Made by a program: the position numbers and the translations under genes. Shown one piece after another: positions 946 through 37,456 of a DNA stretch of 37,456 bases; the stretch's first letter is position 1, and the number at the start of each line of letters is the position of its first letter. Under the pieces are notes generated by a model. The model had not been told where the DNA came from. It worked only from the letters and a program-made list of their open reading frames with translations, and searched no databases. Source of the stretch: Macrostomum lignano (taxonomy: Eukaryota). Where the stretch lies: positions 1-37,456 of the forward strand of contig NIVC01000351.1 of assembly GCA_002269645.1 (NCBI GenBank). Reading direction: 5' to 3'.

Positions 946-1007
946 GCCACAATGATCTACTCTAATATACTCTAATCTACTCTAAGCTAATCCAATCAAA
1001 TCTACAG

Positions 1008-5495: not shown

Positions 5496-6202
5496 CTGCC
5501 TCTCTACCTCTCCCCGCCTCTCTACCTCTCCCTGCCTCTCTCTACCTCTCCCGCCTCTCTGTATTTTCCAACTGTCTCTATAAATAAAGTATGGCAACCA
5601 TGACCGGGTGAATTTTAGCAATATGGATAATTTTAGGATCATAGCTATAGCCAATAAGCTCCCTAATTAAACAACATCACTAATAATAGGGGCAGTGCCA
5701 GCCATCTCTGTCAAATCCTCGCACACGCTTCAAGCACGATAAGTACCGGCTTGTGGTATCTACCGGGTCCCTGCAGCTCAGGACGTTGGTCCAAATTTTT
5801 TGGCCGTCATGCCAGACTCAAGGATGCCTATTATAATAATTATTATAAGCTCTCGCTGGACTCCCTCTTCAAGATCTAAATTTAGAAACTGGGTAAGCTA
5901 AGAAAAACAATTTTCCTTCGCATTAATCGGTCCCCTGTGTTGCTTAATTCCGTCAATAGCTTTCAAGCTGACCGGATCGAATACCGGAGTTGGGATCGTC
6001 TTTAAAAATATTCCCCAAGATTTCGTAAGTCCAACATCGATATTTTCAAGCTCACACGAGTACAGCACGAAATTCTCCGGGGCTAAAAGAATCGATGCTC
6101 AGGTTGGGCCAATAGCAGCGGTTTGGGATGGGTAGACTTAAGCGCGTGGTCTTCTGTTTTGAAAATCCGAAAGAAAGCTGCTTCAGTTCAAGGCTTCAAG
6201 CA

Positions 6203-9061: not shown

Positions 9062-12000
9062 TCAAAGCGACTGAAATACGTTATACTTCTCAGAGAAAGA
9101 GACTGCGCTCATTTTGACTTGATTTCGGCGATTCTGCCCGATCCGGGCGCGCATGTCGGCCAGGCTGACATTGCCGAGCGGGTCAGCGCCGGTGGTCGGC
9201 GCGGCCGGCGGCGGCAGCTGCGACGGGGCGGACTTTTGTGGTAACGGTGCAGCTCTGAGAGACTGCGGCTGGCTCTCCTGCTGCTGAATGAGGCAGTTTA
9301 GAGAGGTTATGAGATGTTTGCCCAGGCTGGGGGTATGGGAAGTTCGCCTGGCAACTGAGGATCTGGGAGGCTGGCCTAGCAACTGAAAATCTGGCAGGCT
9401 GGCACAGCAACTGATGATCTCGGAGGCTGGCCCAGCAACTGAGGATCTGGGAAGGAGGTTGGCGCAGCAACCGAGGATGTGGGAGGCTGTCCCAGCAACT
9501 GAGGATCTGGTAGGCTGGCTCAGCAAATGAGGATCTGGTAGGCTGGCTCAGCAAATGAGGATCTGGTAGGCTGGTTCAGCAACTGAGAATCTGGGAGGCT
9601 GGCACAGCAACTGAGGATCTGGTAGGCTGGCTCAGCAAATGAGAATCTGGGAGGCTGGCACAGCAACTGAGGATCTGGGAGGCTGGCACAGCAACTGAGG
9701 ATCTGGGAGGCTGGCCCAGCAACTGAGGATCTGGGAGGCTGGCACAGCAACTGAGGATCTGGTAGGCTGGCACAGCAACTGAGGATCTGGTAGGCTGGCA
9801 CAGCAACTGAGGATCTGGGAGGCTGGCACAGCAACTGAGGATCTGGGAGGCTGGCACAGCAACTGAGGATCTGGGAGGCTGTCCCAGCAAATGAGGATCT
9901 GGTAGGCTGGCACAGCAACTGAGGATCTGGTAGGCTGGCACAGCAACTGAGGATCTGGGAGGCTGGCACAGCAACTGAGGATCTGGGAGGCTGGCACAGC
10001 AACTGAGGATCTGGGAGGCTGGCACAGCAACTGAGGATCTGGGAGGCTGGCTGGCACAGCAACTGAGGATCTGGGAGGCTGGCACAGCAACTGAGAATCT
10101 GGGAGGCTGGCACAGCAACTGAGAATCTGGAAGGCTGGCACAGCAACTGAGGATCTGGGAGGCTGGCACAGCAACTGAGGATCTGGGAGGCTGGCACAGC
10201 AACTGAGGATCTGGGAGGGCCAGCGAGTGCAAGCAGCCAGCAGGCTCACCGGCGCCTCAGCAGACTGAACAGATGCGCTGTCGCTGGCCGCGGCGCAGTC
10301 GGCGTTGCCGCTGTCCTTCTCTGCCGACATGCTGGCCTCGACGGGCCGGCGGTCGGGCGTGACGCAACGAACAACGCCGGGCACGGCGGAGCTGAGCTGC
10401 AGGCCGGCTTGCCGGAAGCGCCGGAGCGACTGCGGGCTGCAGACGAACAGGTCGACCCGGCCCGGCTGCGCCTTCACCCGGCTGACCACCGTGGCGTGCG
10501 AGGCGTCTTCTGTGAGGGGGCAGTGCAATTTGTTAGACAGGGTATGACAGTCTGTTAGACAGGGTAGATAGAAGCCTGTTAGACAGGGTGTATAGAAGTC
10601 TGTTAGACAGGATATAGAAATGAGGCAGCTTGTTATAAATCATCTATATTACTTATAGCAGTAGCTAATCGCAACTTTTTATCCTGGCCAATCAGCTTTT
10701 TGTTTAAATTACAGGTTTGTTAAAACGATACTTTGTTAAAAATTCCTTTTTATTTTTGTTTAAATGTCTTATGTTCACCCCCCTCCTTTGTCAACGATTA
10801 TATAAAGAGACAACTTGGACCGCCAAATATACAACTCGCGCTCACCCTCGTTTCTCAACTAAAAACTCAATAACTCTTAGCGATTGGAGTGTTCAACCTT
10901 AAACTTCCGCTAAGACTTGTTTTCGCTTTTTTATTTATTGAATAGGGAAACTTGAGGTCGTGGAGACCAAGAATTAGGGATCTGAATAGGGAAACTTGAG
11001 GTCGTGGAGACCAAGAATTAGGGATCTGAATAGGGAAACTTGAGGTCGTGGAGACCAAGAATTAGGGATCTGAATAGGGAAACTTGAGGTCGTGGAGACC
11101 AAGAATTAGGGATCTGAATAGGGAAACTTGAGGTCGTGGAGACCAAGAATTAGGGATTTAAATAGGGAAACTTGAGGTCGTGGAGACCAAGAATTAGGGA
11201 TTTAAATAGGGAAACTTGAGGTCGTGGAGACCAAGAATTAGGGATTTAAATAGGGAAACTTGAGGTCGTGGAGACCAAGAATTAGGGATTTAATAGGGAA
11301 ACTTGAGGTCGTGGAGACCAAGAATTAGGGATTTAAATAGGGAAACTTGAGGTCGTGGAGACCAAGAATTAGGGATTTAAATAGGGAAACTTGAGGTCGT
11401 GGAGACCAAGAATTAGGGATTTAAATAGGGAAACTTGAGGTCGTGGAGACCAAGAATTAGGGATCTGAATAGGGAAACTTGAGGTCGTGGAGACCAAGCA
11501 TAGAAACCTGAGTAGGGAGATCGAGATCGTATAGATCTTAAGAAAGCCGTGCGGGCTAATAATAGACATTAAGGATTAGGCATTAGGAATAGTTTAGCTA
11601 CTGCTGGACACCCTTGATCCTCGGAAAACGCTAGACTTTCGGACTAAAACTAGGGAATTAGACAGTGTCTTACCGCTCGGGCACTACACGCTATCACAAG
11701 GTTTCCAAGAAATCGTGTGAAATTAGAGAAAGGTCATAGTTTAGGGCAGCCAATACCACTAGAAATAGACAGCTTAGTGATAAGAACCAGAAAGTCTGTA
11801 AAGATTCAGTAGCTTTAAGGTGAAATTGCAGTTAGGAACGATTACGTCGGCGACACTTGGTGGGATATCGAAGAAGAAGGAAACACGTCTGTGACAGAAA
11901 TCTGTTAGAAAGTTTACATACATCTATAGATCTTTTTGCCAAGTGTATTTAGGAACCCATCAGACACTACTATTCTAATATTTGACCTTGATTGGAAGCA

Positions 12001-14023: not shown

Positions 14024-14677
14024 GAGTGAGATGAGCACAAGTGTACACCTAGAATACTCTAAGGAGGGCACTGGCACCGTGATTGGCAAGTTGCTTATTT
14101 AGGATTGGTCTACGCGATTTTATATACAGGGCTTCAAGCACTTTTAGTCTGTACTCATTTGAGCACGTATGGATGGTGGAAAAGTTTTTATCTATTTGGC
14201 TGTCACAGCATTCTTTGCATATCATCAGGTGGTCGTGCACGGCCGACATCTTTTGCCTATGTTCTCTACTTCTCACGTACAGGTGTCGGGTAGTTTCACC
14301 TATGTAGGTGATACTCTGGTCGCCAGAGCATTGAAATTGGTAAACGACACCTGCCCGTAAGGAGCTGGGAACGCGGCATTTCAAATTCTTAACAAAACGA
14401 CCGATTTTCTCGCAACGGAAAGTGACCATGAGCTTCACATTTAAATACTTATTAAACGCTCTGATGAGGTTCTTTTTAAAATGAACAGAAGAAGCAGGCC
14501 CATAGAAAGGAATGGAGATATGGGTGCAATCAATCCTCAGATCTTTCTGTTCTTTCTTATTCTGTCTATTGTTAGGATTCGCGAGTTTACCATCAATGAA
14601 TTTCCTAATGTGGTAATCGAGGAACCGTTTCGGGTAGTTGTTTTTTTCATATAAATCAACAAATAAATCGTTACTAA

Positions 14678-14728
14678 TTTTAAGAGCCTGACGATGCCTG
14701 ACGCGAGGCGAAACATGTCGCATAAAAA
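14678..14728 (+). ncRNA. Minimal type I hammerhead ribozyme in the inverted pseudo-LTR copy
   Basis: CTGACGA 14688-14694, GAAA 14710-14713, GTC 14717-14719; core identical to the minus-strand copy. Confidence 0.75.
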
Positions 14729-14755
14729 ATGATAGCGATCACCTTCTTAATTCTA

Positions 14756-14883: not shown

Positions 14884-17054
14884 TACCACGGTGCAGATAA
14901 ATGCTGCTACCTCCTCGTGGTCAGAGCGGAGAGCCGCACTTAACTGCTGCGGCGGCCAAATGCGGCAGGACCTGCTTTGCCAGCGCCTTTAACACCGCGC
15001 TGGGCGAGAATCGTGGAAGTGCCGAGTATGCGGAAGTGTGCGCTGCAGTCAGAACCGCCTCGGAGCAAGCAGTCCCGATGATGCAACCGGCTCAACGTGG
15101 GCAGCCGGTCTGGCAGGACGACCCTGCGATTCAGGCAGCGAGGGAAGATCTGGAGAGGCTCCGCTTGAGCAGGCGACCAACCCGCGAGGCAGAGGCAGCT
15201 CTGGCGGCTGTCTACCTGCAGCGCCAACAAGCGGCTGTCGATGACGCCATTCAGGCTGTCTCTGCCGCTGGGCCCGATGCCAGAGGGCACGTGGCCTGGT
15301 CCGCCATCAACTCTCTGACGGGGCGAAAGCGGCGCAATCCGCTGAACCTGGCTGGTGACACTCCGGACGAGTGCAGGAACGAGCCGCGCGAGTTCTTCGC
15401 CGCCATCGTTAACGCGCCGCCACCCCCGCTGTCAGACAGTCTGACGCTGCCGCCGGAGACGCCGTTGCCGGCAGAGAAGAGTTTCAGCGTAGCCCCAGTC
15501 AACGCAGCCGACGTTGTCAAGCTCGCCCAGCAGTCACCGGGCGGGAAAGCGCTGGGTCCGGACGAGGTGCCCATCGAGGCGCTGCGCATCCCCTGTGTGG
15601 CCGCTGAGGTCGCCAGAGTGATGAACCGCGTGCTCTTCGGTGAGGCGGCGCCCAACGAATGGACCACGGCGCACATCGTCGCTGTTCCAAAGAAGCCGGG
15701 CACCACTATGCTTGAAGACCATCGAGGCATCTGCCTTCAGTTCTGTGCAGCGAAGCTGTTCAACCGGATGCTGCTTTCGCGGTTGCAGCCTGTGCTGGAT
15801 CCGTACCTGCGCCCAGAGCAGAACGGGTTCCGGCCCCATCGCGGCACAGTGGCGCAGATCCTGGCTCTTCGCCGAGTCATCGAGGAGGCGCAGATTCGCC
15901 AGTCGCTCCTGATTCTAATCTTTATAGATTTCAAGAAGGCTTTCGACTCGGTTGTCAGAGCCGTGCTTCCAATGGTGCTCCGCGCGTACAACGTGCCTGA
16001 GCAGCTGATCTCCGCCATCATGGCGATGTACCGTGATACGAAAGCTGCTGTGACAACACCGGACGGCCTATCGGACTCCTTTGAGACATCCTCCGGAGTA
16101 CTTCAGGGAGATACGCTGGCGCCGTTCCTGTTCGTCCTGGTGCTTGACTGGGTGCTGCGGACTGCTCTTCCTACCGACGACGACGGCTTTCTGCTGCGGC
16201 GACGCATAGGTTGACGTCAACCGGAGAAGCGGCTCAGCGTGCTTGGCTACGCCGACGACCTCGCCCTGCTGTCCTCGACCATCGAGGGCGCCCAACGGCA
16301 GCTGGACAGGCTAGTTGTCGTTGCGGCGAGCGTCGGCCTGGTGGTCAACACGCAGAAGACCGTTGTGCTCTGCGTGCCGGACGACACCGAGGCTGCAATA
16401 TTCTGCCGAGGCGCTGACGGGCAGTCGACCGAACTCCCGCGATGTCAGCAGTTCGTCTACCTCGGCGGTCTGGTTCCAGACGCTCGCGAGGACCTGCGAC
16501 GCCGCCGCGGGCTTGCCTGGGCTCCTTTTTGTTCTGTGAGGGCAGTCCTGCAGTCCGAGGCCCTACCGGACCGCCAGAGGGCGGCGCTGTTCCAGGCGGT
16601 AATCGAGACCGTCCTGCTGTACAACGCCGAGACCTGGACGCTGACGGACTCACTCGAACAGCAAGTCGATGCGGCGCACGCTGGCCTGCTGCGCGCCGCC
16701 TTCAACATCGGCGTCGAGCGGGTCACCAACGCGGCACTCTATCGCCGCGCTGGCCTGCCACGTCCAAGTGATCTACTGCGCCGTCGGGGACTCCAGCTAG
16801 CAGGCCATCTCATCCGCGCCGAGTCGTACTGCCCACAGCCGGTGCAGGAGGTGCTGCTGCTCACGCTGCAGGCACCCTACCGGCGAGGTCAAGCGCGAAC
16901 TCGGCGTTATGTCCACTGTCTGCTGGCTGACGCCGGCGCCCCAGACACTGCCGGTGGCGCGGCCTTTGTTCGCGCCCAAGCCATGAAGCGCGCCCTGTGA
17001 CGCTGACTTTTGCCATCTTGACAGCGTATTTTGTTTTTTTTGTTGTTGTTGTTG
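14884..17054 (+). mobile_element. 5'-truncated non-LTR retrotransposon (RTE-like) reverse transcriptase with one premature TGA at 16212-16214; T-rich/(TTG)n tail
   Basis: RT motifs KALGPDEVP, VPKKPG, EQNGFRPHRG, FIDFKKAFDSV, GVLQGDTLAPFLF, YADDL, YLGG and LAGHLIR. ORFs 14901..16214 and 16239..17000 share one frame; no endonuclease domain seen. The clade assignment is inference. Confidence 0.9.
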
Positions 17055-25861: not shown

Positions 25862-26651
25862 AATTCTACTCCTTCAATTCTATTTCTTTTTCTACTCTCT
25901 GCTCAGAGCATTCTACTCCCTCAATTCTATCCCTTTCTACTCTCTGCTCAGAGCATTCTACTCCCTCATTCTATTCCTTTCTACTCTCTGCTCAGAGCAT
26001 TCTACTCCCTCATTCTATTCCTTTCTACTCTCTGCTCAGAGAATTCTACTCCCTCATTCTATTCCTTTCTACTCTCTGCTCAGAGCATTCTACTCCCTCA
26101 TTCTATTCCTTTCTACTCTCTGCTCAGAGAATTCTACTCCCTCATTCTATTCCTTTCTACTCTCTGCTTAGAGCATTCTACTTCCTCATTCTATTCCTTT
26201 CTACTCTCTGCTCAGAGCATTCTACTCCCTCAATTTAATTCCTTTCTACTCTCTGCTTAGAGCATTCTACTTCCTCATTCTATTCCTTTCTACTCTCTGC
26301 TCAGAGCATTCTACTCCCTCAATTCAATTCCTTTCTACTCTCTGCTTAGAGCATTCTACTTCCTCATTCTATTCCTTTCTACTCTCTGCTCAGAGCATTC
26401 TACTCCCTCAATTCAATTCCTTTCTACTCTCTGCTTAGAGCATTCTACTTCCTCATTCTATTCCTTTCTACTCTCTGCTCAGAGCATTCTACTCCCTCAA
26501 TTCAATTCCTTTCTACTCTCTGCTTAGAGCATTCTACTCCCTCATTCTACTCCTTTCTACTCTCTGCTCAAAGCATTCTACTCCCTCAGTCTATTCCTTT
26601 CTACTCTCTGCTCAGAGCATTCTACTCCCTCATTCTATTCCTTTCTACTCT
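25862..26651. repeat. 44-bp minisatellite CTACTCTCTGCTCAGAGCATTCTACTCCCTCATTCTATTCCTTT
   Basis: Direct reading; 44-aa period in the translated ORFs. Confidence 0.95.
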
Positions 26652-26866
26652 CACCCCAGAGTTCCATACACATTAAATTCCATCCCGTATGCAAAGTTAG
26701 GAACCAACTCAGTGAGCAAGCTTTTCATTGGCTTAAAGGAACTTCTTAAAGGAACTCGCCAATTCGGTTTCAAAAGTCTGGCTCTCGACAAACCAATACA
26801 GAAGACCGTCTTTTACTGGCATCTTGAGCTGCCTCTAAATTTTGTCAAATTTCAAACAAAAGCGAA

Positions 26867-29800
26867 ATGACCATCTCCAAGCGTTGGTCGGTTGCGAGAA
26901 ATCTTCTGGTCCTTCTGCTTCTAATAACGATTGTTCTCAATGGTGAGGTGGGCTTTTGTTTAGATCGATGCTTTCTAGCTCTGTTCCACACCCTGCATCC
27001 ACCGTCCTACAAGCTGCACCCTCTGTCGCACACCCTGCACCCTCTGTCCCACACCCTGCACCCTCTGTCCCACACCCTGCACCCTCTGTCCCACACCCTG
27101 CACCCTCTGTCCCACACCCTGCACCCTCTGTCCTACACCCTGCACCCTCTGTCCTACACCCTGCACCCTCTGTCCCACACTCTGCACCCTCTGTCCCACA
27201 CCCTGCACCCTCTGTCCTACACCCTGCACCCTCTGTCCCACACCCTGCACCCTCTGTCCCACACCCTGCACCCTCTGTCCTACACCCTGCACCCTCTGTC
27301 CTACACCCTGCACCCTCTGTCCCACACCCTGCACCCTCTGTCCCACACCCTGTACCCTCTGTCCCACACTCTGCACCCTCTGTCCCACACCCTGCACCCT
27401 CTGTCCTACACCCTGCACCCTCTGTCCCACACCCTGCACCCTCTGTCCCACACCCTGCGACCTCTGTCCCACACCCTGCGACCTCTGTCCTACACCCTGC
27501 ACCGTCTGTCCCACACCCTGCACCCTCTGTCCCACACCCTGCACCCTCTGTCCCACACCCTGCACCCTCTGTCCCACACCCTACACCCTCTGTCCCACAC
27601 TCTGCACCCTCTGTCCCACACCCTACACCCTCTGTCCCACACTCTGCACCCTCTGTCCCACACCCTACACCCTCTGTCCCACACCCTGCACCCTCTGTCC
27701 CACACCCTGCACCCTCTGTCCCACACCCTGCACCCTCTGTCCCACACCCTGCACCCTCTGTCCCACACCCTGCACCCTCTGTCCCACACTCTGCACCCTC
27801 TGTCCCACACCCTGCACCCTCTGTCCCACACCCTGCACCCTCTGTCCCACACTCTGCACCCTCTGTCCCACACCCTGCACCCTCTGTCCCACACCCTGCA
27901 CCCTCTGTCCCACACCCTGCACCCTCTGTCCTACACCCTGCACCCTCTGTCCCACACCCTGCACCCTCTGTCCTACACCCTACACCCTCTGTCCCACACC
28001 CTGCACCCTCTGTCCTACACCCTGCACCCTCTGTCCCACACCCTGCACCCTCTGTCCTACACCCTACACCCTCTGTCCCACACCCTGCACCCTCTGTCCT
28101 ACACCCTACACCCTCTGTCCCACACCCTACACCCTCTGTCCTACACCCTGCACCGAAATTTTTTATTTTTTGAGTGTGCTTAGTGTTAAAAAAATGAAAT
28201 TTTCCTGACCTAACAAAGTCAATAAGCAGTTCAAAATTCCTTAAAACTTTATTAAACGCTAAGCTATTAAAATTAATTTCAGACTAATTTCAGAATAGGA
28301 CTCTCATTAAGAAGCCGTTATTGCCTACCTCGCGAGGACAGAAAAATCATAAATCATAAATCATAAATCATAAATCATAAATCACAAATCATAAATCATA
28401 AATCATGAATCATAAATCATAAGTCATGATTTTCAAAGACCGACGATATTGATTTTAACTGCTCTACCATGCGATTTGGCCTCAGTGGTTGCCAATCAAA
28501 GCTGGTTTGTCCCCCTCCATTGATCAGCAGTTGCTGCCCTCCCCTACAATTTGCGATGGCGAGCGCTTGAATTGCTAGTCAGTCAATCAGTCAAGTGAGC
28601 AGTGCTCAAGAATGGGCGCTCTGATTTGGTGTTGCTACGCTGATTCAGATGGCTGTTTTAATCTGAGATTCGCCATGAGATCGGAGTGTTTCTGATTTTC
28701 ATGATGATGAGAATTAATCATTACAAAAAGTTCTGGACAAATGAAGAGGGTCTATGAAGATTCACGATTCTGATTGCCAAAATCTTATTTTGAGAGTTGG
28801 ATTGCAGAATCGTGACTCTGATTGCAGAATCGTGACTCTGATTGCAAAATCGTGACTCTGATTGCAGAATCGTGACTCTGATTGCAAAATCGTGACTCTG
28901 ATTGCAAAATCGTGACTCTGATTGCAGAATCGTGACTCTGATTGCAGAATCGTGACTCTGATTGCAAAATCGTGTGTCTGATTGCAGAATCGTGACTCTG
29001 ATAGCAAAATCGTGTGAGTTTGATTGCAAAATCGTGTGAGCCTGATTGCAAAATCGTGTGAGTTTGATAGCAAAATCGTGTGAGCCTGATTGCAAAATCG
29101 TGTGAGTTTGATAGCAAAATCGTGTGAGTTTGATTGCAAAATCGTGTGAGCCTGATTGCCAAATCGTGACTCTGATTACAAAATCTCGTGAGTCTGGTTG
29201 CAAAATCGTGACTCTGATTACAAAATCTCGTGAGTCTGGTTGCAAAATCGTGACTCTGATTACAAAATCTCGTGAGTCTGATTGCAAAATCGTGTGAGTC
29301 TGATTGCCAAATCGTGACTCTGATTACAAAATCTCGTGAGTCTGATTGCAAAATCTCGCGAGTCTGATTGCAAAATCTCGCGAGTCTGATTGCTAAATCG
29401 TGTGAGTCTGATTGCTAAATCGTGTGAGTCTGATTGCAAAATCTCGCGAGTCTGATTGCAAAATCTCGTGAGTCTGATTGCAAAATCGTGACTCTGATAG
29501 CAAAATCGTGAGTCTGATTGCAAAATCTTGTGAGTCTGATTGCAAAATCTCGTGAGTCTGATTGCAAAATCTTGTGAGTCTGATTGCAAAATCTCGCGAG
29601 TCTGATTGCTAAATCGTGTGAGTCTGATTGCAAAATCGTGTGAGTCTGATTGCAAAATCTCGTGAGTCTGATTGCAAAATCGTGTGAGTCTGATTGCAAA
29701 ATCTTGTGAGTCTGATTGCAAAATCGTGTGAGTCTGATTGCAAAATCTCGTGAGTCTGATTGCTAAATCTTGTGAGTCTGATTGCAAAATCTTGTGAGTC

Positions 29801-31340
29801 TGATTGCAAAATCGTGAGTCTGATTGCAAAATCGTGTAGCTCTGATTGCAAAATTGTGTGGCTCTGATTGCAAATATAGGGAATGTCTGAATGCTGAATC
29901 AGTTTTGAAAAGAAAGAGTTTTTTTCATTTTAATATTTTTCATTGAAGTCCCGGAGCGCTGCCTTCAGATTTTTTAATGCACTTTCCAGGGATTATGTAT
30001 TTGTATGCGATAGATACAGATTAATAACGGAAGATATTCAGTAAGGAGGCCTCCATGCAGCTTATATAAGAAACCGTGGAGAAGGGATCAAGATCGGAGA
30101 ATTAGGTGGCCAAAAATGGTGAATAAGATTTGCATTAACCACTGCAATATCCGGACTAGATTATAGTGGGAAAGCAGTAGTATTGTTATTGATTGGAAAA
30201 TCTTTTAGCTCCTACGAACTATACAGAGGACCTGACCGCTGGAATATAATCGATTAGCTATGAAAGCCTTGAAAACGGAATCAAGCTTGGATCGTTAGAG
30301 CTGCACTGACCTCGTTAAAGTTTGTTTAACTGCATGACTTTTCATGCTGCCTCTCGTTATATGCAATCAGACTGACTGATAATATTTCAGTAGCCTATGA
30401 CTGTAGCCTTGAATTTTTTAACCTGCCACTATCCCTCTCAGAACTTCAGTAACCTGCCGCTATCCCTCTCAGAACTCCAGTAACCTGCCGTTTTCCGCCT
30501 CTCGGAACTCCAGTAACCTGCCGCTATCCCTCTCAGAACTTCAGTAACCTGCCGCTATCCCTATCAGAACTCCAGTAACCTGCCGCTATCCCTCTCAGAA
30601 CTCCATCTCATTTCTCCTCGCCCTCCTTCGGTGTCCCAGGCGCCCGCGCCGGTAGAAATGAGAAGCGTCTGCTGCAGCACCTGCTTGAAAACAAATCAAA
30701 TCTGCACAACCCGATGGAGCGGCCTGTTGAGAACGACACCGAGATTCTGTACGTCTGGTTCAAGGTGTCACTGCAGCAGATTATCGATGTGGTAAGTTGC
30801 CTATCGTTTTGTGGCGCAAATCAGGTTTTACTCCATAATTTTTCCTTGTTTTCACTTTTCATTTTTATAGGATGAGAAAAATCAAATTCTATTCTCGAGT
30901 ATTTGGTTGGACTTGGTAAGTGGGCTTCGTGTGTCCAAGTTTTAATTTTGCTCTTTTCTACCGTCAAATTCATTTTTTTCAGTCGTGGACAGATTATCAC
31001 TTCAAGTGGGACCCCGCGGACTTTGGCAACATCACTAAAATTAACATCGACCCAAAGAGGGTCTGGCGACCGGACGTGCTGCTGTACAACAGGTTGGAGA
31101 CTGCTTAGGCTGTCCATAGAGTGAATTCAATCCTTACTCGACCCCCAGTTCCCCCATCCGCTCACCAACTCAGTCTTTTTTATTAGAGGCATGAGGGCTA
31201 ACCCTGGTGCACTTAAGGACATTTTCACACATTTTCACACTCGCACAACCGGCGATAGGCATTGCTGCCCATTCCACCGACTCCCCTGAGCAGGCACACA
31301 AGCGCGCGGATACGTACGCAGTCATACGCACCGGCACACA

Positions 31341-31382
<42 letters not shown>

Positions 31383-34300
31383 AGTTTACAGCGACCCTAA
31401 CTTTATTTATCGTTAGGCATGTACACTTCACTGTGCCTTGGGGCTTGGCCCTCAATGGCGTTAATTGCACAAGCAGAGCTAAGCCGAGATTCCAATTCAG
31501 CCCCAAACTAATGTGACTGCACTTGGAATCGAGCCTGGGCCACTGGCACATCAGAGCGCCGCGCCAGACCACTGGGCTACGCCCCCACCAACCCAGTCAT
31601 TCTCTCATACAAGCCGTAAGATATCAATGAAGCCTCCCTATCTTTTGACGATTTTTTTTAATAGCGCGGACGAAAAATTTGACGCCACTTATCCGACCAA
31701 CGTGGTGATCGACAACACGGGCTTCATGACCTACATACCGCCCGGCATGTTCAAGTCCACCTGCAAGATCGACATCACTTGGTTCCCATTCGATATGCAG
31801 GAGTGTCTGATGAAGTTCGGCTCGTGGACTTACGACGGCGGGACAGTTGATCTGCGTTTCAAGTGCGCCAACGAGAGTCTCAAGTCTGTCCAGGACCGGC
31901 TGAACGATCCGCGACGTTGCACCGAGAGAGGCAGCGGCGACACGTCCAACTATGTGAAGAGCGGGGAGTGGAACCTGGAAGGTGCGTCTCTTGCATGGAA
32001 GTTCTAGAAGCTCGTTCGAGTGGTCTAGATGGACTTTTAATGACGTCCGCTAGCGAAATTATTTCATTCAGATCGAAACTACGACTTGGGGTTATCGGTG
32101 ATAGTGGGCAAAGCAACTCACGTCAGCGGTAATGTCCTGACACTCGCCAAACACCCTATATTCAGGGTCTAGTGTACAGAAATTTTTCCCCAAGCTTGTC
32201 CGTTGTCTTTCACGTCCGTGAGGGCCAGATCAGAAAACAGATGCCTGCTCGCTTGGTAGATTATCGCATTGATTAAGAGACTCCCTTTTAAACTAACAAA
32301 CGGAGATTTTTAATTCCATTAGGTCTGTTAAAATTACGACTAACCGAAGCTGATGCTGATGCGCCCGTCAACTCGCGACAATTTCACTCGCCATCAACTG
32401 CATGCAGGCCTGTTGGGCGTTCGAACCAGCAAACTCTACGATTGCTGCCCGCATCCGTTTGTTGACCTGAAATTTTACCTGCGCATACGCAGGCGCCAGC
32501 TCTACTTTTTGTTCAACATGCTGGGCCCGGTGGCATTTCTGTCCACTTTAGCAATACTCTGCTTTCTAATTCCGCCAGACGATGGCGAGAAAGTCTGCTT
32601 CGGTGTGTTGATAGAGCTGTCAATGAGTTGTGGGCGTCACAAATGACAACTGTACACAGGGCTTTGATGTCCTGACTTTGTGTCAGATGTTTTGCAAACA
32701 AGAGCGCGCAAACGGCCTAAATACGCTCGTATATTTTGCACTACTTTGCTGAAACGTGCGCAAAATTTATTTCTCACGATCTACAAACGTATAGTCCGCC
32801 TTATCTGCGCGTTATCCTTACACATCAAAAGCTCTATTAGCCCTTTTACAGAACATAAGCTATATCTCAAATTAAAATCTCTCCGACCCTAGATTGACCA
32901 ACACCCTCCGACCCTAGATTGACCAACACCCCTCCGACCCTAGATTGACCAACACCCCTCCGACCCTAGATTGACTAACACCCCTCCGACCCTAGATTGA
33001 CCAACATCCCTCCGACCCTAGATTGACCAACACCCCTCCGACCCTAGATTGACCAACACCCCTCCGACCCTAGATTGACCAACACCCCTCCGACCCTAGA
33101 TTGACCAACACCCCTCCGACCCTAGATTGACCAACACCCCTTCGACCATAGATTGACCAACACCCCTCCGACCCTTAGATTGACCAACACCTCCATCGAC
33201 CTTAGACTGGCCAGCACCTCCTTCAAACCTCGACTGACCGACGCACTCACTCCATTCATTCTCCATTGAACAAAAAGCCAATGGACAAAGACAGGTAAAA
33301 TGATTCTCGATCCCCACGGCCCTTTAGTACCCCAAATATACTCGCCTTCCAACGCAGGCATGCCGGGTCAGAGAACCGCTTTACTGTACGACTGCTGCCC
33401 GTTTCCCTTCATCGACCTGAAGTACCGCATCAAGATTCGTCGGCGGACCTTATACTACGGCTTCAACCTTATCATACCGTGCGTGCTTATCTCCACTATG
33501 ACACTGCTCACCTTCCTCCTGCCGCCGGACGCAGGGGAGAAAATCTCTCTCGGTACGTACGCTCGTACGCGACAATTGGCATGTCTTTGCTCTGCAATGC
33601 TTATCAAAGTTTTGTCAAATGTAGATCCAATGTAGGAAAATCATGGATAACAGATTGTTGTCATTTTAGACACGTTTCCGACCGTGTAATTAGATCCTCA
33701 CTATATATTTTAAAGCATCAGATTCATTGCATTGTACAGGCGTGACAATACTATTGTCACTTATCATGTTTCTGCTACTAGTAGCAGACGCGATGCCGCA
33801 GACCTCGGAGTCTCTGCCGCTGATTGGTAAACTTCTAGAGCAGTCCATGTTATCACTGTCAAATTAAATCTTGAACGATGTACAGGCTTAGTTATCTTCT
33901 GTTTTGTGTTATCGTTGTGCTTCATGTTGTCAATATCGACTGTCTGAATTTAAGCTTTCGAACGTTCTACTAATCCAATGTGCCATGCATGTTGCATGAC
34001 TCACTGCTCTACTAACTCTATTTATAGGAGTCACTATCCTGCTGTCGCTCACCGTCTTCCTCATGACGGTTGGAGAGGCCATGCCCGCCACCTCGGACTC
34101 GGTGCCAGTCATCGGTAGGTGAACTCAGCAGGCGTCTTGCAACTCCTTCTTAAGCAAATTAGGAAACAATTGAGAGTTAAGAAGATTACTCTGTATCTAT
34201 GCAGAGCTGAGACCAGAATCCAGGAGGGACTGAGACCAGAATCCAGGAGGGACTGAGACCAGAATCCAGGAGGGACTGAGACCAGAATCCAGGAGGGACT

Positions 34301-37202
34301 GAGACCAGAATCCATGAGGGACTGAGACCAGAATCCAGCAGGGACTGAGACCAGAATCCATGAGGGACTGAGACCAGAATCCATGAGGGACTGAGACCAG
34401 AATCCATGACGGACTGAGACCAGAATCCATGACGGACTGAGACCAGAATCCATGACGGACTGAGACCAGAATCCATGAGGGACTGAGACCAGAATCCATG
34501 AGGGACTGAGACCAGAATCCTTGAGGGACTGAGACCAGAATCCATGAGGGACTGAGACCAGAATCCAGCAGGGACTGAGACCAGAATCCATGAGGGACTG
34601 AGACCAGAATCCATGAGGGACTGAGACCAGAATCCATGAGGCACTGAGACCAGAATCCATGATGGACTGAGACCAGAATCCATGAGGGACTGAGACCAGA
34701 ATCCATGAGAGACTGAGACCAGAATCCATGAGGGACTGAGACCAGAATCCTTGAGGGACTGAGACCAGAATCCATGAGGGACTGAGACCAGAATCCAGGA
34801 GGGACTGAGACCAGAATCCATGACGGACTGAGACCAGAATCCATGAGGGACTGAGACCAGAATCCATGAGGCACTGAGACCAGAATCCATGATGGACTGA
34901 GACCAGAATCCATGACGGACTGAGACCAGAATCCATGAGGGACTGAGACCAGAATCCATGAGGGACTGAGACCAAAATCCATGAGGGACTGAGACCAGAA
35001 TCCATGAGAGACTGAGACCAGAATCCATGAGGGACTGAGACCAGAATCCATGAGGGACTGAGACCAGAATCCAGGAGGGACTGAGACCAGAATCCATGAG
35101 GGACTGAGACCAGAATCCATGAGGGACTGAGACCAGAATCCATGATGACTTTGACCAGACCACGAAGTCCGGGTTCAGATTCCAGTAACCTGTATTTTGT
35201 CCATCGGTTACTAATGCCACATTTTCTGTTTCTGATTCCAATGAAACTAGAACAAATTCTGATATTACTTAACTAATTTACATGCACTTGCAAAATTAGT
35301 ATTAACATATGACTAACTTACCCCAACGCTACCCAAGGCTGATAGACAGTTGATACAAACCGAGCCAATTAAAACTTTGCGCTGTGGCATTTCAGGCATG
35401 TACTTTGCCTGCACAATGATCATGTGCAGTCTGTCGGTGGTATTCACGGTGATTGTGCTCAACTATCATCACAGGAATGCGGAGTCTCATCCCATACCTA
35501 ACTGGGTGAGTGAGATCACTATGCTTGCGTCATTTGCAGTGTAGTGAGCTGAAGTCAATGGCTCTGACAATGCTGCTGAGTGTATATTCGAACTAGATTT
35601 GTCAGTACAGTGGAACAGGTCACGTTTTCTTTGCCCGGATCAACCCTAGCTACTCAAACTCAAGCGGTTAACCTAAAATGCTATTTGATACATTTAACTA
35701 GATTTGAGGCGACAAATTATCAGATAAAAATTACAGCTGCAGGAGGGCCGTGGGGCACCCCGGCGCGACCGCCCTCGGTGACATCGTCTCACAACCAGCG
35801 CTGACGGCAATTCTGCCCGTTCCGCTGGCTCCTGAGCACAATTTACGAGCTACACGGTTTAGCGCTGAGTTGCTGATCTGCTCTGCTTAGCGAAAGTCAG
35901 TGAGAGACTCACTTTAGCCAGCCGGGTTGGCCTGTCGGTGCATGTGTCCGTCGCATTCATAGCCGGTCTCGAGCCCTAAATTGAGACAATAATCAGCCAA
36001 TCCACTCAATAATGCAGGTTCGCAAGTTCATCTGCGTCTACCTGGCCAGCATTCTGTGCATGCGGCACCACGGGCGGACGGAGCACTCCGAGCCAATCAG
36101 AGTGCGACGCCGGCTGAGCGACTGGCAGCGCAGGGCCAGCCAACTGCAGCGCCGCTCCGGCGGCCTGGAACTGCGGGAGCGCTGCTCGAAATCTTTGCTG
36201 GCGAATGTGCTGGACATTGAAGACAATTTCCGAACATCCGTGCACCGGCAGCAGCGACCATCAATAAGGTAGCTCTTTTCGATGATGTACATACAACGTT
36301 ATAGTAATAAATAACTAATGTACAAGCGTAGAAGGCCGCTCAGGTGCTTTCTAAATGGATTTAGCAAAGATGTTTTACAAAATCTGTCTATAAAAATCAA
36401 GGACCACCAGGAACACTTCGTTATTATAAGGACGTAACACTCGATTCGTGTAAAAATAGTTGAAGGCCGATTTTCGTTCTCGTATGTACATTAGTGAGAT
36501 AGACGAATTGCATGATTTTCAACATAATGTACTGAGTGCAGAAGCCTAGTAGTCCTTGATAAAAATTACAACGAAGAGACAGGACTGACGGTAGTTTTGC
36601 CAGAATAATAATATCAGATTGATTTTTCTGAAATTAACCAGCTTTAACTGGATAAAACAGTGATTTTTTTACAAAATCGACTTTGAGCCTAAGTTCATTC
36701 CTCACCAAATTATACGGACTGAGAGTTCAAGGCTGGAAGGCATCAGAGTTTGGCACCAGCACATAGCACAGAGTCAGAACTGGACGTCATTGCAGATCGT
36801 ATCCGACTGGACTGACGGCATCCTTTGATGAGACGCACGGCTGGGGCCAAGAGCGCCCGCTGCCGCCAGCAGCTGCCGACTGACTCGCCGACCTCCTACA
36901 GTCCTTGCCAACCCGGCCGGCGCGCCCGCGACGCCTCAACCGACTGGGGATCGCAGCTGGACCAGCCGGATCCGAAACAACCCGACGACTGCAACAGCCA
37001 GGCCGAGCTGGAGGCCATCATTCAGGAGCTTCGCTTTGTCACCAGGAAGATCGCGAACGACGTGGCGGACGGAGAAGTCAGCAGCGAGTGGAAATTCGCA
37101 GCCAGAGTGATTGACCGGCTCTGCCTGATCCTGTTCTCCGGCTTCACTCTGATTGCAACCTGTGCCATTCTGTTCTCTGCTCCTGACGTATTCAAAGGCT
37201 GA
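26867..37202 (+). CDS. CHRNA7-like: Nicotinic acetylcholine receptor alpha subunit, alpha7-like. Exons 26867-26942, 30640-30791, 30871-30915, 30983-31092, 31665-31981, [32408-32602 or 33358-33552], [33740-33826 or 34028-34114], 35396-35505, 36018-36268, about 36902-37202
   Basis: Signal peptide exon MTISKRW...[13 protein letters not shown]; [10 protein letters not shown]; DEKNQIL; [12 protein letters not shown]; Cys-loop [15 protein letters not shown]; GSWTYDG; loop C YDCC; M1-M4; [11 protein letters not shown]; [14 protein letters not shown]. Exon sizes 45/110/195/87/110 match the alpha7-type structure as I recall it. One isoform totals 1644 nt in frame. The last acceptor is uncertain. Confidence 0.95.
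26985..28152. repeat. 21-bp minisatellite CACACCCTGCACCCTCTGTCC in nAChR intron 1
   Basis: Direct reading; it extends the signal-peptide exon into a spurious 438-aa ORF. Confidence 0.97.
28345..28425. repeat. 7-bp repeat (AAATCAT)n
   Basis: Direct reading. Confidence 0.9.
28765..29872. repeat. 21-23-bp variable minisatellite TCTGATTGCAAAATC(TC/GT)GTGAG
   Basis: Direct reading. Confidence 0.95.
30418..30604. repeat. 31-bp tandem repeat AGTAACCTGCCGCTATCCCTCTCAGAACTYC, about 6 copies, just upstream of the nAChR exon 2 acceptor
   Basis: Direct reading. Confidence 0.9.
31345..31586 (-). mobile_element. tRNA-derived SINE-like element with (TG)n tail in a nAChR intron
   Basis: Minus strand GGGGGCGTAGCCCAGTGGTCT (A-box-like) ... 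GGCTCGATTCC (B-box-like), no clean cloverleaf, followed by a body with AATAAA and then (TG)n. Confidence 0.6.
32408..32602 (+). CDS. nAChR alternative exon 7a (loop C + M1 + M1-M2 linker)
   Basis: CAG|GC...G|GT, 195 nt, no stop: [65 protein letters not shown]. Confidence 0.8.
32884..33195. repeat. 26-bp minisatellite CCAACACCCCTCCGACCCTAGATTGA between exons 7a and 7b
   Basis: Direct reading. Confidence 0.95.
33358..33552 (+). CDS. nAChR alternative exon 7b (loop C + M1 + M1-M2 linker)
   Basis: CAG|GC...G|GTACGT, 195 nt: [65 protein letters not shown]. Confidence 0.9.
33740..33826 (+). CDS. nAChR alternative exon 8a (M2 pore helix)
   Basis: CAG|GC...G|GTAAAC, 87 nt: [29 protein letters not shown]. 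Confidence 0.88.
34028..34114 (+). CDS. nAChR alternative exon 8b (M2 pore helix)
   Basis: TAG|GA...G|GTAGGT, 87 nt: [29 protein letters not shown]. Confidence 0.9.
34206..35143. repeat. 23-bp minisatellite CTGAGACCAGAATCCATGAGGGA in the nAChR intron after 8b
   Basis: Direct reading; accounts for three minus-strand ORFs. Confidence 0.97.
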
Positions 37203-37456
37203 CGGAAGATATTTGGTCAGCAATTCAGTTAGCCATTGAAGAAATCGCTAGTTACTTTAAGTAGCAATATCAGCACATTTGCGTCTTTCAAATTTACTAT
37301 ACACACATATTATACTCAGCTACCGTAAGTCTAGTGTTCAGTCACATTTCACTGTAGTTACATTAAATTTTGTATTTGAAAGAGTTACAAGTGTATAGTA
37401 GTACATGCTATTATCAAACTATTCGCATCTAATTCAAATGTGATCTATGCATTGCT

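What the first reader, a model, noticed from the sequence alone, without database searches (positions are those of the whole stretch)
32408..34114. Two tandem exon pairs (7a/7b, 8a/8b) could let one nAChR gene swap its ligand loop C/M1 and its pore helix combinatorially
Seen: two 195-nt exons (32408-32602, 33358-33552) and two 87-nt exons (33740-33826, 34028-34114). All four are phase 1-1, AG/GT-bounded and stop-free, and the paired copies differ heavily in sequence while keeping exact length and key motifs. The order 7-7-8-8 implies two separate single-exon duplications; a block duplication or collapsed haplotypes would give 7-8-7-8 or near-identical copies. Known: insect alpha6 subunits use mutually exclusive exons 3a/3b and 8a/8b/8c. 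Inference: this gene makes up to four isoforms by mutually exclusive splicing, including a loop C/M1 exon swap that I do not know from other nAChRs. If the host is not an arthropod, the M2 swap would be convergent or very old.
Basis: partly seen in the sequence, partly recalled or inferred. Interest (0 to 1): 0.88.

Follow-up and report, generated by a model that had tools for sequence, protein, structure and literature searches.

The report
Swappable exons in flatworm nicotinic receptor
An alpha7-like nicotinic receptor gene of the flatworm Macrostomum lignano carries two adjacent pairs of duplicated exons that are most likely used one per pair, giving subunits with different M1 and pore (M2) helices. 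The pore-exon swap is known from insects, and I found no paper describing the M1-exon pair, although it also occurs in other worms and a brachiopod.

Summary
Four exons lie exactly where stated (195, 195, 87 and 87 nt). All are AG/GT-bounded, phase 1-1 and open, inside one alpha7-like nAChR gene at about 30640-37204 on the + strand. The host is the flatworm Macrostomum lignano.

The order e5-7a-7b-8a-8b-e9 recurs at 13 loci of this genome. These form four paralogous genes, each present in 3-4 near-identical copies. Between paralogs synonymous sites are saturated, yet all four exon types stay intact and conserved (omega about 0.02-0.16). Neither copy is therefore a dead pseudo-exon.

A divergent 7a upstream of a canonical 7b also occurs in a nemertean, two annelids and a brachiopod. 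The nemertean's RefSeq isoforms use 7a or 7b, never both. The 8a type is the only exon 8 in parasitic flatworms.

The differences that consistently separate a from b lie in pre-M1, M1 and M2, including pore positions 13', 16', 17' and 20'. None lies in loop C.

No transcript of this particular gene was found, so mutually exclusive use is inferred. How exclusivity is enforced is unknown, and the age of the duplications is not statistically resolved. I rate this a new variant of a known kind (insect alpha6 exons 3 and 8), of moderate interest.

The parts
26867..26942 (+). Tentative exon 1 (signal peptide [25 protein letters not shown], phase-1 GT donor)
   Evidence: ATG-initiated hydrophobic ORF with a GTGAGG donor in the phase that exon 2 needs. 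It is not supported by homology or RNA and is only a candidate.
30640..30791 (+). Exon 2 (N-terminal ligand-binding domain)
   Evidence: tblastn to human alpha7 and splice sites read from the sequence
30871..30915 (+). Exon 3, 45 nt, single copy (no 3a/3b pair here)
   Evidence: The flanking introns are only 79 and 67 nt, which leaves no room for a second copy.
30983..31092 (+). Exon 4, 110 nt
31665..31981 (+). Exon 5 (fused equivalent of alpha7 exons 5 and 6; Cys-loop C-x13-C; contains a lineage-specific insert); ends in phase 1
32408..32602 (+). Exon 7a: beta9, loop C (YDCC), beta10, M1, M1-M2 linker and M2 -1' to 3'. This is the divergent 'a' type (RRRQ, no M1 Cys, GEKVCF).
   Evidence: It is orthologous to 7a of paralog groups B-D. 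It evolves fastest in this gene, but pN is still far below pS.
32881..33218 (.). 26-nt x 13 minisatellite inside the 755-nt 7a-7b intron
   Evidence: Its length differs between haplotype copies (78 gap columns).
33358..33552 (+). Exon 7b: the same protein segment, canonical alpha7-like 'b' type ([19 protein letters not shown]...GEKISL)
   Evidence: It is 59.7% identical to human alpha7 over the exon.
33740..33826 (+). Exon 8a: M2 4' onward plus the start of the M2-M3 linker, 'a' type (13' M, 16'/17' LL, 20' D, PQTSE)
   Evidence: Parasitic flatworms use the same type as their only exon 8.
34028..34114 (+). Exon 8b: the same segment, canonical 'b' type (13' V, 16'/17' MT, 20' E, PATSD)
34207..35159 (.). 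23-nt x 41 minisatellite in the 8b-9 intron
35396..35505 (+). Exon 9, 110 nt (M3)
36018..36268 (+). Exon 10 (start of the cytoplasmic loop, with the [13 protein letters not shown] motif)
36902..37204 (+). Last exon (end of the cytoplasmic loop, M4, stop codon). The acceptor was chosen as the best in-frame AG and is not verified.

Best explanation
The window (a whole 37-kb contig of the Macrostomum lignano assembly) carries an alpha7-like nicotinic acetylcholine receptor alpha-subunit gene. The gene has two adjacent clusters of tandemly duplicated alternative exons.

The splicing machinery most likely includes exactly one exon 7 (a or b) and one exon 8 (a or b). This would give up to four subunit isoforms of identical length. 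Their ligand-binding core is the same, but they differ in pre-M1, M1, the cytoplasmic mouth of M2 (exon 7) and the upper two-thirds of M2 plus the first residues of the M2-M3 linker (exon 8).

All versions keep the alpha-type YxCC loop C and the GEK cation-selectivity motif. The swap should therefore tune gating, desensitisation, conductance or Ca2+ permeability, and possibly assembly. It should not change ligand class or charge selectivity.

Shown: the exon anatomy, its recurrence in four paralogs, purifying selection on all four exon types, the presence of the same kind of pair in other phyla, and either/or use in annotated isoforms of a nemertean ortholog.

Inferred: mutually exclusive use in this particular gene, the functional consequences, and the mechanism that enforces exclusivity. 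Steric hindrance, U2/U12 incompatibility and NMD look excluded here. That leaves RNA structure or trans-acting factors.
For: Anatomy. The exons are AG/GT-bounded, phase 1-1, 195/195 and 87/87 nt, and every one-of-each combination is in frame. Both the aa and bb isoforms pass Pfam Neur_chan_LBD and Neur_chan_memb. The best solved relatives are alpha7 (435 bits, against about 305 for the next subunit class).

Recurrence. The order e5-7a-7b-8a-8b-e9, with the same lengths and splice sites, occurs at 13 loci forming four paralog groups. A fifth paralog has only 7b and 8a.

Selection. Between paralogs pS is 0.5-0.87 (saturated) and pN is 0.02-0.25 for 7a, 7b, 8a and 8b. Omega is 0.02-0.16 where computable, similar to the constitutive exons 5 and 9.

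Type-specific residues are fixed across paralogs. In the exon-7 peptide these are positions 30, 34, 47, 62 and 64. In M2 they are 13', 16', 17', 20', 24' and 27'.

Other phyla. Tandem 7a/7b with the divergent copy upstream occurs in Lineus, Owenia, Capitella and Lingula. Five Lineus RefSeq isoforms, all 480 aa, carry 7a or 7b, never both.

Macrostomum gene models. Group D models have 7a+8b (P0008, P0133). Group C models have 7b+8a (P0011, P0021). Group E and the parasitic flatworms have fixed 7b+8a. At least three of the four combinations therefore exist as complete proteins.

Precedent. Insect alpha6 splices homologous 87-nt M2 exons 8a/b/c mutually exclusively (PMC1919356).
Against: No transcript or transcript-derived protein of this gene (group A) was found. 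The only public model of it co-includes all four exons (P0001).

The window's 7a is the fastest-evolving 7a: tree branch 0.51, loss of the M1 Cys, and 2' Ser changed to Cys. One near-identical copy of the locus (C352) has a 1-bp deletion in a G-run of 7a.

Both exon lengths are multiples of three. Double inclusion or double skipping would therefore stay in frame and would not be removed by NMD.

No conserved intronic docking or selector sequence, and no notable inverted repeat, was found. The a-b introns (755 and 201 nt) are too long for steric exclusion.

How far the RefSeq and MAKER models rest on RNA evidence could not be checked here.
Confidence: 0.75

Rival explanations
1. In this particular gene one copy of a pair, most plausibly 7a, is a pseudo-exon that is no longer spliced in. 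The gene would then behave like paralog E, with a fixed choice, and the extra copies would be relics of an ancestral alternative-exon system.
For: The window's 7a has the longest branch among Macrostomum 7a copies and lost the conserved M1 Cys. The A-lineage 7a accumulated about five times more non-synonymous change than the A-lineage 7b; I derived this from the pairwise dN values. The C352 copy has a 1-bp deletion in 7a. Paralog E shows that loss of 7a and 8b does happen. No RNA evidence was found.
Against: 7a is still 195 nt, open and AG/GT-bounded in two of the three copies. pN between A and B is 0.15 against pS 0.73, which is far from neutral. The C352 deletion lies in a homopolymer of a long-read assembly and may be a sequencing error. 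8a and 8b show no sign of decay.
Confidence: 0.15
2. All four exons are constitutively included, as in the public model P0001. The product would be a longer protein with duplicated loop C/M1 and M2 segments.
For: Co-inclusion stays in frame, and several database models are built that way (P0001, P0004, P0005, P0006).
Against: Co-inclusion would place a second extracellular loop C after a membrane-crossing M1, followed by two M2 fragments in a row. That is incompatible with the pentameric ligand-gated channel fold (inference from the established topology). Other models and the Lineus isoforms take one of each. In the tick alpha6, a transcript with both 3a and 3b gave no functional receptor (PMC13578988). 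Ab initio predictors routinely chain in-frame duplicated exons.
Confidence: 0.03
3. The pairs are an assembly artefact (collapsed haplotypes or a mis-joined paralog).
For: M. lignano has several near-identical copies of most loci, and this contig is a short alternative copy.
Against: The copies within a pair are only 59-62% identical. All other exons are single. The same arrangement appears at 13 independently assembled loci and in four other phyla.
Confidence: 0.01
4. The exon-7 pair arose independently in flatworms and again in nemerteans, annelids and brachiopods, with convergent M1 changes. It would then not be one ancient alternative exon.
For: The loop-C half of the exon groups all flatworm a and b copies together (99/99). 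AU tests do not reject a flatworm-specific duplication: p = 0.45 for the whole exon and 0.14 for the M1 half. Arthropod exon-7 duplicates form their own clade.
Against: In the whole-exon tree the spiralian 7a copies form one clade (95/92). In every lineage the divergent copy lies upstream. These copies share Lys/Arg at position 30, a bulky residue in place of Gly at 34, Leu in place of Met at 47, and Val and Phe at M2 1' and 3'. Lineage-wise grouping of the loop-C half is also what gene conversion or co-adaptation with the rest of the binding domain would produce.
Confidence: 0.3

Closest known systems
Insect nAChR alpha6 mutually exclusive exons 3a/3b and 8a/8b/8c (Grauso et al. 2002; Jin et al. 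2007, PMC1919356)
   Same: Both belong to the alpha7-like subunit group. The duplicated exon 8 is the same exon: 87 nt, covering M2 from 4' onward. The copies are tandem, of equal length and phase, and are chosen alternatively. One hemimetabolan variant (…IADALPQTSEAIPLL) shares the 20' Asp and PQTSE signature with Macrostomum 8a.
   Different: The host here is a flatworm. There are two exon-8 copies, not three, and there is no exon-3 pair. An additional, directly adjacent exon-7 pair is present, and the whole arrangement is multiplied over four paralogs. Orthology of the 8a variants to any insect variant is only weakly indicated (72/34 and 81/57 support).
Lineus longissimus (nemertean) alpha7-like gene, RefSeq isoforms X1-X6
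   Same: It has the same 7a (RRRK…GEKVSF) upstream of 7b (RRRT…GEKISL). The isoforms are of equal length and use either one.
   Different: Lineus has a single b-type exon 8, and it has exon 3a/3b and 4a/4b pairs that Macrostomum lacks.
Drosophila Rdl (GABA receptor) exons 3a/b and 6c/d (own knowledge, not checked here)
   Same: It is a Cys-loop receptor gene with two separate two-way mutually exclusive clusters that give four combinatorial isoforms.
   Different: It is a different receptor class. Both of its clusters lie in the extracellular domain rather than in M1/M2.
Vertebrate CHRNA7
   Same: It is the best solved-structure relative. Its exon lengths of 45/110/…/195/87/110 nt are, as I recall them, the same as those measured here. 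Exons 7b and 8b are 60% and 66% identical to the human protein.
   Different: It has single copies of exons 7 and 8. The human exon sizes come from memory and were not checked with a tool.
Bombyx mori alpha8 alternative 'exon 7' (PMC2045683)
   Same: It is a tandem duplicated alternative exon in an nAChR transmembrane region.
   Different: It is a different subunit and a different segment (TM2-TM3). The duplication is recent (86% identity). Only the exon number coincides.

Membership tests
[quoted passage not shown] | Neur_chan_LBD plus Neur_chan_memb domains above the curated thresholds | tested here: met
   The aa isoform scores 210 and 150 bits and the bb isoform 209 and 176 bits, against cut-offs of 26 and 28.
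[quoted passage not shown] | Cys-loop C-x13-C and vicinal Cys pair in loop C (the alpha-type signature) | tested here: met
   [15 protein letters not shown] lies in exon 5. YDCC is present in both 7a and 7b.
[quoted passage not shown] | Cation-selective M1-M2 motif (G-E-K at -2' to 0') and Leu at 9' | tested here: met
   GEK is present in 7a and 7b. L9' is present in 8a and 8b. Actual ion selectivity was not measured.
alpha7-like subgroup (vertebrate alpha7, nematode ACR-16, insect alpha5/6/7) | Closest to alpha7-type subunits rather than to other nAChR classes | tested here: met
   The top named database hits are alpha7 / ACR-16-like proteins. PDB alpha7 scores 435 bits, against about 305 for muscle alpha1 and alpha4.
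Cluster of mutually exclusive, tandemly duplicated exons | Adjacent homologous exons of the same length and phase, each with its own splice sites | tested here: met
Cluster of mutually exclusive, tandemly duplicated exons | Both copies maintained by purifying selection | tested here: met
   Omega is 0.02-0.16 between paralogs with saturated synonymous sites. Pairs are retained at 13 loci.
Cluster of mutually exclusive, tandemly duplicated exons | Mature mRNAs contain exactly one exon of the cluster | not testable with these tools
   No RNA data for this gene were found. The evidence is indirect: paralog models have one of each, and Lineus isoforms have 7a or 7b but not both.
Cluster of mutually exclusive, tandemly duplicated exons | A recognisable exclusivity mechanism (steric hindrance, U2/U12 incompatibility, NMD of the wrong combinations, or competing RNA pairings) | tested here: not met
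   The a-b introns are 755 and 201 nt. All sites are GT-AG. The exon lengths are multiples of three. No conserved intronic complementarity was found. This lowers no claim about function; it only leaves the mechanism open.
Orthologue of the arthropod alpha6 exon-8 cluster | Same exon position and length | tested here: met
   An 87-nt exon encoding M2 from 4', the same segment as in the insect proteins
Orthologue of the arthropod alpha6 exon-8 cluster | Variant-by-variant orthology (a single duplication in a common ancestor) | tested here: inconclusive
   The 28-column tree joins flatworm 8a with the hemimetabolan IADA variant at only 72/34 to 81/57. The AU test does not reject a flatworm-specific duplication (p = 0.16).

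The most novel reading that the evidence does not exclude
The alpha7-like gene of the last common ancestor of lophotrochozoans, or even of protostomes, may already have been modular, with an alternative M1 exon (7a/7b) and an alternative pore exon (8a/8b). Macrostomum would then be the only lineage seen so far that keeps both. Under this reading, insect alpha6 exon-8 variants, the exon-7 duplicates of hemimetabolous insects and crustaceans, and the single-type genes of parasitic flatworms, molluscs and bryozoans are all differential remnants of one ancient system of combinatorial channel tuning.
Probability: 0.15. Interest if true: 0.72.

Novelty: new variant of a known kind. Interest (0 to 1): 0.52.

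Why it matters
Mutually exclusive exons in nAChRs have been treated as an arthropod alpha6 speciality, important because alpha6 is the spinosyn target. This gene shows the same device in a flatworm. It also adds a second, adjacent cluster that swaps M1 and the inner mouth of M2. That second cluster appears widespread in spiralians, but I found no paper describing it.

This has three practical consequences.
- Flatworm and other spiralian nAChR gene models that chain the duplicated exons (for example P0001 and P0004, and the Owenia and Capitella proteins) or miss one of them (Lingula) are wrong and need re-annotation.
- The isoforms differ at pore-lining positions 13', 16'/17' and 20', and on M1. 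In alpha7, as I recall, these regions control desensitisation, Ca2+ permeability and allosteric modulation. One gene could therefore supply pharmacologically distinct receptors, which is relevant to cholinergic anthelmintic targets.
- The system offers a natural experiment on how M1 and M2 variants combine.

Tried and rejected
(1) Transcript evidence. A junction-spanning 203-aa query (end of exon 5, 7a, 8a, exon 9 and the start of exon 10) against the 5.8-billion-protein set found no RNA-derived fragment of this gene. The only Macrostomum hit was the paralog model P0008.

(2) Exclusivity mechanism. An inverted-repeat search over 31982-35395 gave only short, weak pairs. blastn of exon-masked introns between paralog groups A-D found nothing conserved apart from a shared repeat element in groups C and D.

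(3) Dating by phylogeny. The whole-exon tree supports one spiralian 7a clade. AU tests cannot reject lineage-specific duplications, and the two halves of exon 7 give conflicting signals. Exon 8 has too few columns. I therefore do not claim a date.

(4) Loci that could not be fetched. The Trichobilharzia and Zootermopsis gene ranges exceed 100 kb. The arthropod exon-7 tandem arrangement is therefore inferred from predicted proteins only.

(5) Literature. Five searches of the open-access library found alpha6 exons 3 and 8, tick alpha6 3a/3b and Bombyx alpha8 'exon 7' (a different segment). They found nothing on a loop C/M1 alternative exon or on flatworm nAChR splicing. Subscription journals were not covered.

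(6) A second exon 3 or exon 4 in the window. None exists, and the introns are too short to hold one.

(7) A tRNA-like origin of the repeat in intron 4-5. ARAGORN found nothing.
Full report
WHAT IS THERE. The window is a complete 37,456-bp contig (C351) of a 764-Mb, 5,269-contig assembly. Its best protein matches are all Macrostomum lignano, a free-living flatworm. The + strand from about 30640 to 37204 carries an alpha7-like nicotinic receptor alpha-subunit gene. I built the model from tblastn with human alpha7 and by reading the splice sites.

The exons are:
- 30640-30791
- 30871-30915 (45 nt)
- 30983-31092 (110 nt)
- 31665-31981
- 32408-32602 (7a) or 33358-33552 (7b)
- 33740-33826 (8a) or 34028-34114 (8b)
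- 35396-35505 (110 nt)
- 36018-36268
- 36902-37204

A candidate signal-peptide exon lies at 26867-26942. It is unverified.

CHECK OF THE OBSERVATION. Each is preceded by AG, followed by GT, and open in phase 1-1, with lengths of 195/195 and 87/87 nt. The copies are 59% and 62% identical in DNA, and 53% and 64% in protein. Every other exon is single. Any one-of-each combination gives a 521-residue product. Both the aa and bb products pass the two Pfam nAChR domains. The closest solved structures are alpha7 receptors at 435 bits, against about 305 bits for the next class.

Exon 7 encodes beta9, loop C (YDCC in both copies), beta10, M1, the M1-M2 linker and M2 -1' to 3'. GEK is present in both copies. 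Exon 8 encodes M2 from 4' to the start of the M2-M3 linker.

THE SAME ARCHITECTURE RECURS IN THE GENOME. A search of the whole assembly with the 7a peptide, followed by retrieval of 15 loci, gave the following.

The order e5-7a-7b-8a-8b-e9 occurs at 13 loci, always with 195/87-nt exons and AG/GT borders. The loci fall into four paralog groups:
- A: this window, C2517 and C352
- B: C702, C1984 and C1671
- C: C2207, C2951, C4109 and C4192
- D: C32, C56 and C1341

Each group has 3-4 near-identical copies. I attribute this to the known recent genome duplication of this species (own knowledge). A fifth paralog, E (C387, C4712 and C3901), has only a b-type exon 7 and an a-type exon 8.

Between groups, synonymous sites are saturated (pS 0.5-0.87). 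Non-synonymous divergence stays low in every exon type:
- 7a: 0.13-0.25
- 7b: 0.08-0.15
- 8a: 0.03-0.16
- 8b: 0.02-0.11

Omega is 0.02-0.16 where it can be computed, the same range as the constitutive exons 5 and 9. The exons are short, so single values are noisy, but the pattern is uniform. In the exon-7 tree the Macrostomum 7a copies form one clade (97/98). The 7b copies form another, which also contains the trematode sequences (97/97). The pairs therefore predate the paralog radiation and have been kept by selection ever since. This rules out assembly artefacts. For the family as a whole it also rules out dead pseudo-exons.

WHAT DISTINGUISHES a FROM b. In exon 7, the positions where all a copies differ from all b copies, across Macrostomum, Lineus, Owenia and Capitella, are peptide positions 30, 34, 47, 62 and 64:
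- Position 30: RRR-T in b, against RRR-K/Q/R in a.
- Position 34: Gly (Ala in Owenia) in b, against Ile/Val/Leu in a, at the start of M1.
- Position 47: Met in b, against Leu in a, within M1.
- Positions 62 and 64 (M2 1' and 3'): I-S-L in b, against V/L-S/T/C-F/C in a.

No position in loop C is type-specific. The b type is almost invariant and close to vertebrate alpha7.

In exon 8, the positions fixed between the Macrostomum types are:
- M2 13': Met in a, Val in b.
- M2 16' and 17': Leu-Leu in a, Met-Met/Thr in b.
- M2 20': Asp in a, Glu in b.
- M2 24': Gln/Lys in a, Pro/Ala in b.
- M2 27': Glu in a, Asp in b.

Positions 13', 16'/17' and 20' line the pore in this receptor family. In alpha7, as I recall, they influence desensitisation and Ca2+ permeability; I did not check this here.

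EVIDENCE FOR EITHER/OR USE. No RNA-derived sequence of this gene was found. The indirect evidence has four parts.

(i) Macrostomum gene models of paralog D carry 7a+8b (P0008, P0133). Models of paralog C carry 7b+8a (P0011, P0021, with the BOX15 locus tags of the assembly's own annotation). Other models chain all four exons (P0001, P0004, P0005). I regard chaining as the usual ab initio error for in-frame duplicated exons.

(ii) The nemertean Lineus longissimus has 7a and 7b in tandem. Its RefSeq isoforms X1, X2, X3, X4 and X6 are all 480 aa and contain one or the other.

(iii) Co-inclusion would put a second extracellular loop C behind a transmembrane M1. That is incompatible with the fold (inference).

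(iv) The combinations 7a+8b, 7b+8b and 7b+8a all exist somewhere as complete proteins, so the two choices look independent. Only 7a+8a has not been seen.

DISTRIBUTION OUTSIDE MACROSTOMUM. Genomic loci fetched for orthologs show the following.

| Species (group) | Exon 7 | Exon 8 | Other pairs |
|---|---|---|---|
| Lineus (nemertean) | 7a/7b | single, b type | 3a/3b, 4a/4b |
| Owenia (annelid) | 7a/7b, separated by only 72 nt | single, b type | none found |
| Capitella (annelid) | 7a/7b | single, b type | 3a/3b |
| Lingula (brachiopod) | unannotated divergent 7a upstream of the annotated 7b | single, b type | none found |
| Aplysia (mollusc) | single, b type | single, b type | none found |
| Watersipora (bryozoan) | single, a-like | single, b type | none found |
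| Paragonimus (trematode) | single, b-like | single, a type | none found |

All annotated neodermatan flatworm proteins seen also carry the a-type exon 8.

Predicted proteins of termites, locusts, bugs, decapods and a barnacle contain two exon-7 units. These group together with the single-copy arthropod exon 7s in a clade separate from the spiralian copies.

HOW OLD? The whole-exon tree puts all spiralian 7a copies in one clade (95/92). In every lineage the divergent copy lies upstream of the canonical one. The signal is nevertheless mosaic. The loop-C half groups flatworm a and b copies together (99/99), and only the M1 half prefers grouping by type. AU tests do not reject a flatworm-specific duplication: p = 0.45 for the whole exon and 0.14 for the M1 half.

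Two histories fit the data. One is a single ancient duplication followed by gene conversion, or by co-adaptation of the loop-C half with the rest of the binding domain. The other is recurrent duplication with convergent M1 changes. I favour the first at about 0.6-0.7.

For exon 8, the a type unites Macrostomum and parasitic flatworms (81/78). It joins a hemimetabolan insect variant only weakly (72/34 to 81/57). A flatworm-specific origin is not rejected (p = 0.16).

MECHANISM OF EXCLUSIVITY. All sites are GT-AG, and the a-b introns are 755 and 201 nt. Both exon lengths are multiples of three. Steric hindrance, U2/U12 incompatibility and NMD filtering therefore do not explain exclusivity here. 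I found no conserved intronic complementarity between paralogs and no striking inverted repeats. The mechanism remains open: lineage-specific RNA pairing or trans-acting factors. In Owenia (72-nt intron) steric exclusion is plausible.

THIS GENE SPECIFICALLY. The window's 7a is the most derived 7a (RRRQ, Pro-Val in place of Pro-Cys in M1, DDGEKVCF). From the pairwise values, its lineage accumulated roughly five times more non-synonymous change than its 7b. It is still far from neutral: pN is 0.15 against pS 0.73 in the comparison with group B.

The three group-A copies are identical from the 7a-7b intron through exon 8b, with a single mismatch further downstream in the 8b-9 intron. They differ by 3.3% in the intron upstream of 7a and by 1.5-2.1% within 7a, so those differences say little about constraint. 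One copy (C352) lacks one G in a GGGG run of 7a. This may be an assembly error. I give about 0.15 to the possibility that 7a is no longer used in this paralog.

COMPARISON WITH WHAT IS KNOWN. Insect alpha6 has mutually exclusive exons 3a/3b and 8a/8b/8c, dated to before the radiation of insect orders (PMC1919356). Tick alpha6 has 3a/3b (PMC13578988). Bombyx alpha8 'exon 7' is a different segment in a different subunit (PMC2045683). Five searches of the open-access library returned no description of an alternative loop C/M1 exon in any nAChR, nor of nAChR alternative splicing in flatworms or other spiralians. The library does not cover most subscription journals. The phenomenon is visible in RefSeq isoforms, so it is annotated but apparently not discussed.

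VERDICT. The feature is real and functionally constrained. It is a new variant of a known kind: two adjacent alternative-exon clusters in a flatworm alpha7-like gene family. The M2 cluster parallels insect alpha6. I found no description of the M1 cluster, which is shared with other spiralians. Interest is moderate (0.52). It would rise if RNA data confirm four isoforms and if the clusters prove to date back to the protostome ancestor.

Noticed in passing
window 1-30000 and the gene's introns (for example 4-943, 1421-2452, 2746-3446, 4858-5504, 9351-10218, 10941-11498, 25863-26652, 26979-28154, 28800-29874, 32881-33218, 34207-35159): The contig is packed with long minisatellite arrays (12- to 89-nt units, 13-76 copies). 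These include a 21-nt x 56 array right after the candidate exon 1, and arrays in the 7a-7b and 8b-9 introns whose copy number differs between haplotype copies.
   Followed up: partly
window 14901-17000 (+): Two consecutive open frames, broken by one stop, match reverse transcriptase (RVT_1; E = 1e-18 and 1e-5). This is a degenerate retrotransposon copy. A 229-aa open frame on the opposite strand just upstream (14049-14738) has no Pfam match.
   Followed up: partly
window 966-1433 (+): An open frame matches DUF3105 (E = 8e-25). It lies at the edge of a 12-nt minisatellite and may be an exon of an unrelated gene.
   Followed up: no
G000:C352:2199-2396 (locus L012): The C352 copy of exon 7a lacks one G of a GGGG run near its 5' end, which shifts the frame. 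This is either an inactivating mutation in one copy or a homopolymer error of the assembly.
   Followed up: partly
window 31982-32602 compared with C2517 and C352: The three group-A copies are identical from the 7a-7b intron through exon 8b, introns included, with a single mismatch in the 8b-9 intron. They differ by 3.3% in the intron upstream of 7a and by 1.5-2.1% in 7a. This points to a recombination or gene-conversion breakpoint at about the 3' end of 7a.
   Followed up: partly
window about 31440-31600 (intron 4-5); also the group C intron 5-7a and the group D intron 7b-8a: An interspersed repeat of about 320 nt is shared at 82% identity between the introns of paralogs C and D. By eye, a copy also appears to lie in reverse orientation in this window's intron 4-5. 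ARAGORN finds no tRNA-like structure in it.
   Followed up: partly
L027 (Lineus) 62458-62650 and 69553-69819; L030 (Capitella) 5311-5658: The nemertean ortholog also has tandem exon 3a/3b and 4a/4b pairs, the latter only about 57 nt apart. Capitella has 3a/3b. The exon-3 pair known from insect and tick alpha6 therefore also exists in spiralians. Macrostomum lacks it.
   Followed up: partly
L032 (Lingula) 9685-9885: An intact, divergent exon 7a lies about 500 nt upstream of the exon 7 used in the RefSeq protein of Lingula anatina. It appears to be unannotated.
   Followed up: no
proteins P0009, P0010, P0012, P0017-P0020, P0023, P0024, P0027, P0042: Predicted alpha7/alpha6-like proteins of termites, orthopterans, bugs, decapods and a barnacle contain two exon-7 units in series. 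In the insects the first unit is the same as, or within one to three residues of, the exon 7 of holometabolan alpha7 proteins, and the second resembles alpha6. This suggests that an ancestral arthropod gene with alternative exon 7s was later resolved into separate genes.
   Followed up: partly
G000 loci C387, C4712 and C3901 (paralog E): One Macrostomum paralog has lost 7a and 8b and is fixed for 7b+8a. Parasitic flatworms have the same combination.
   Followed up: partly
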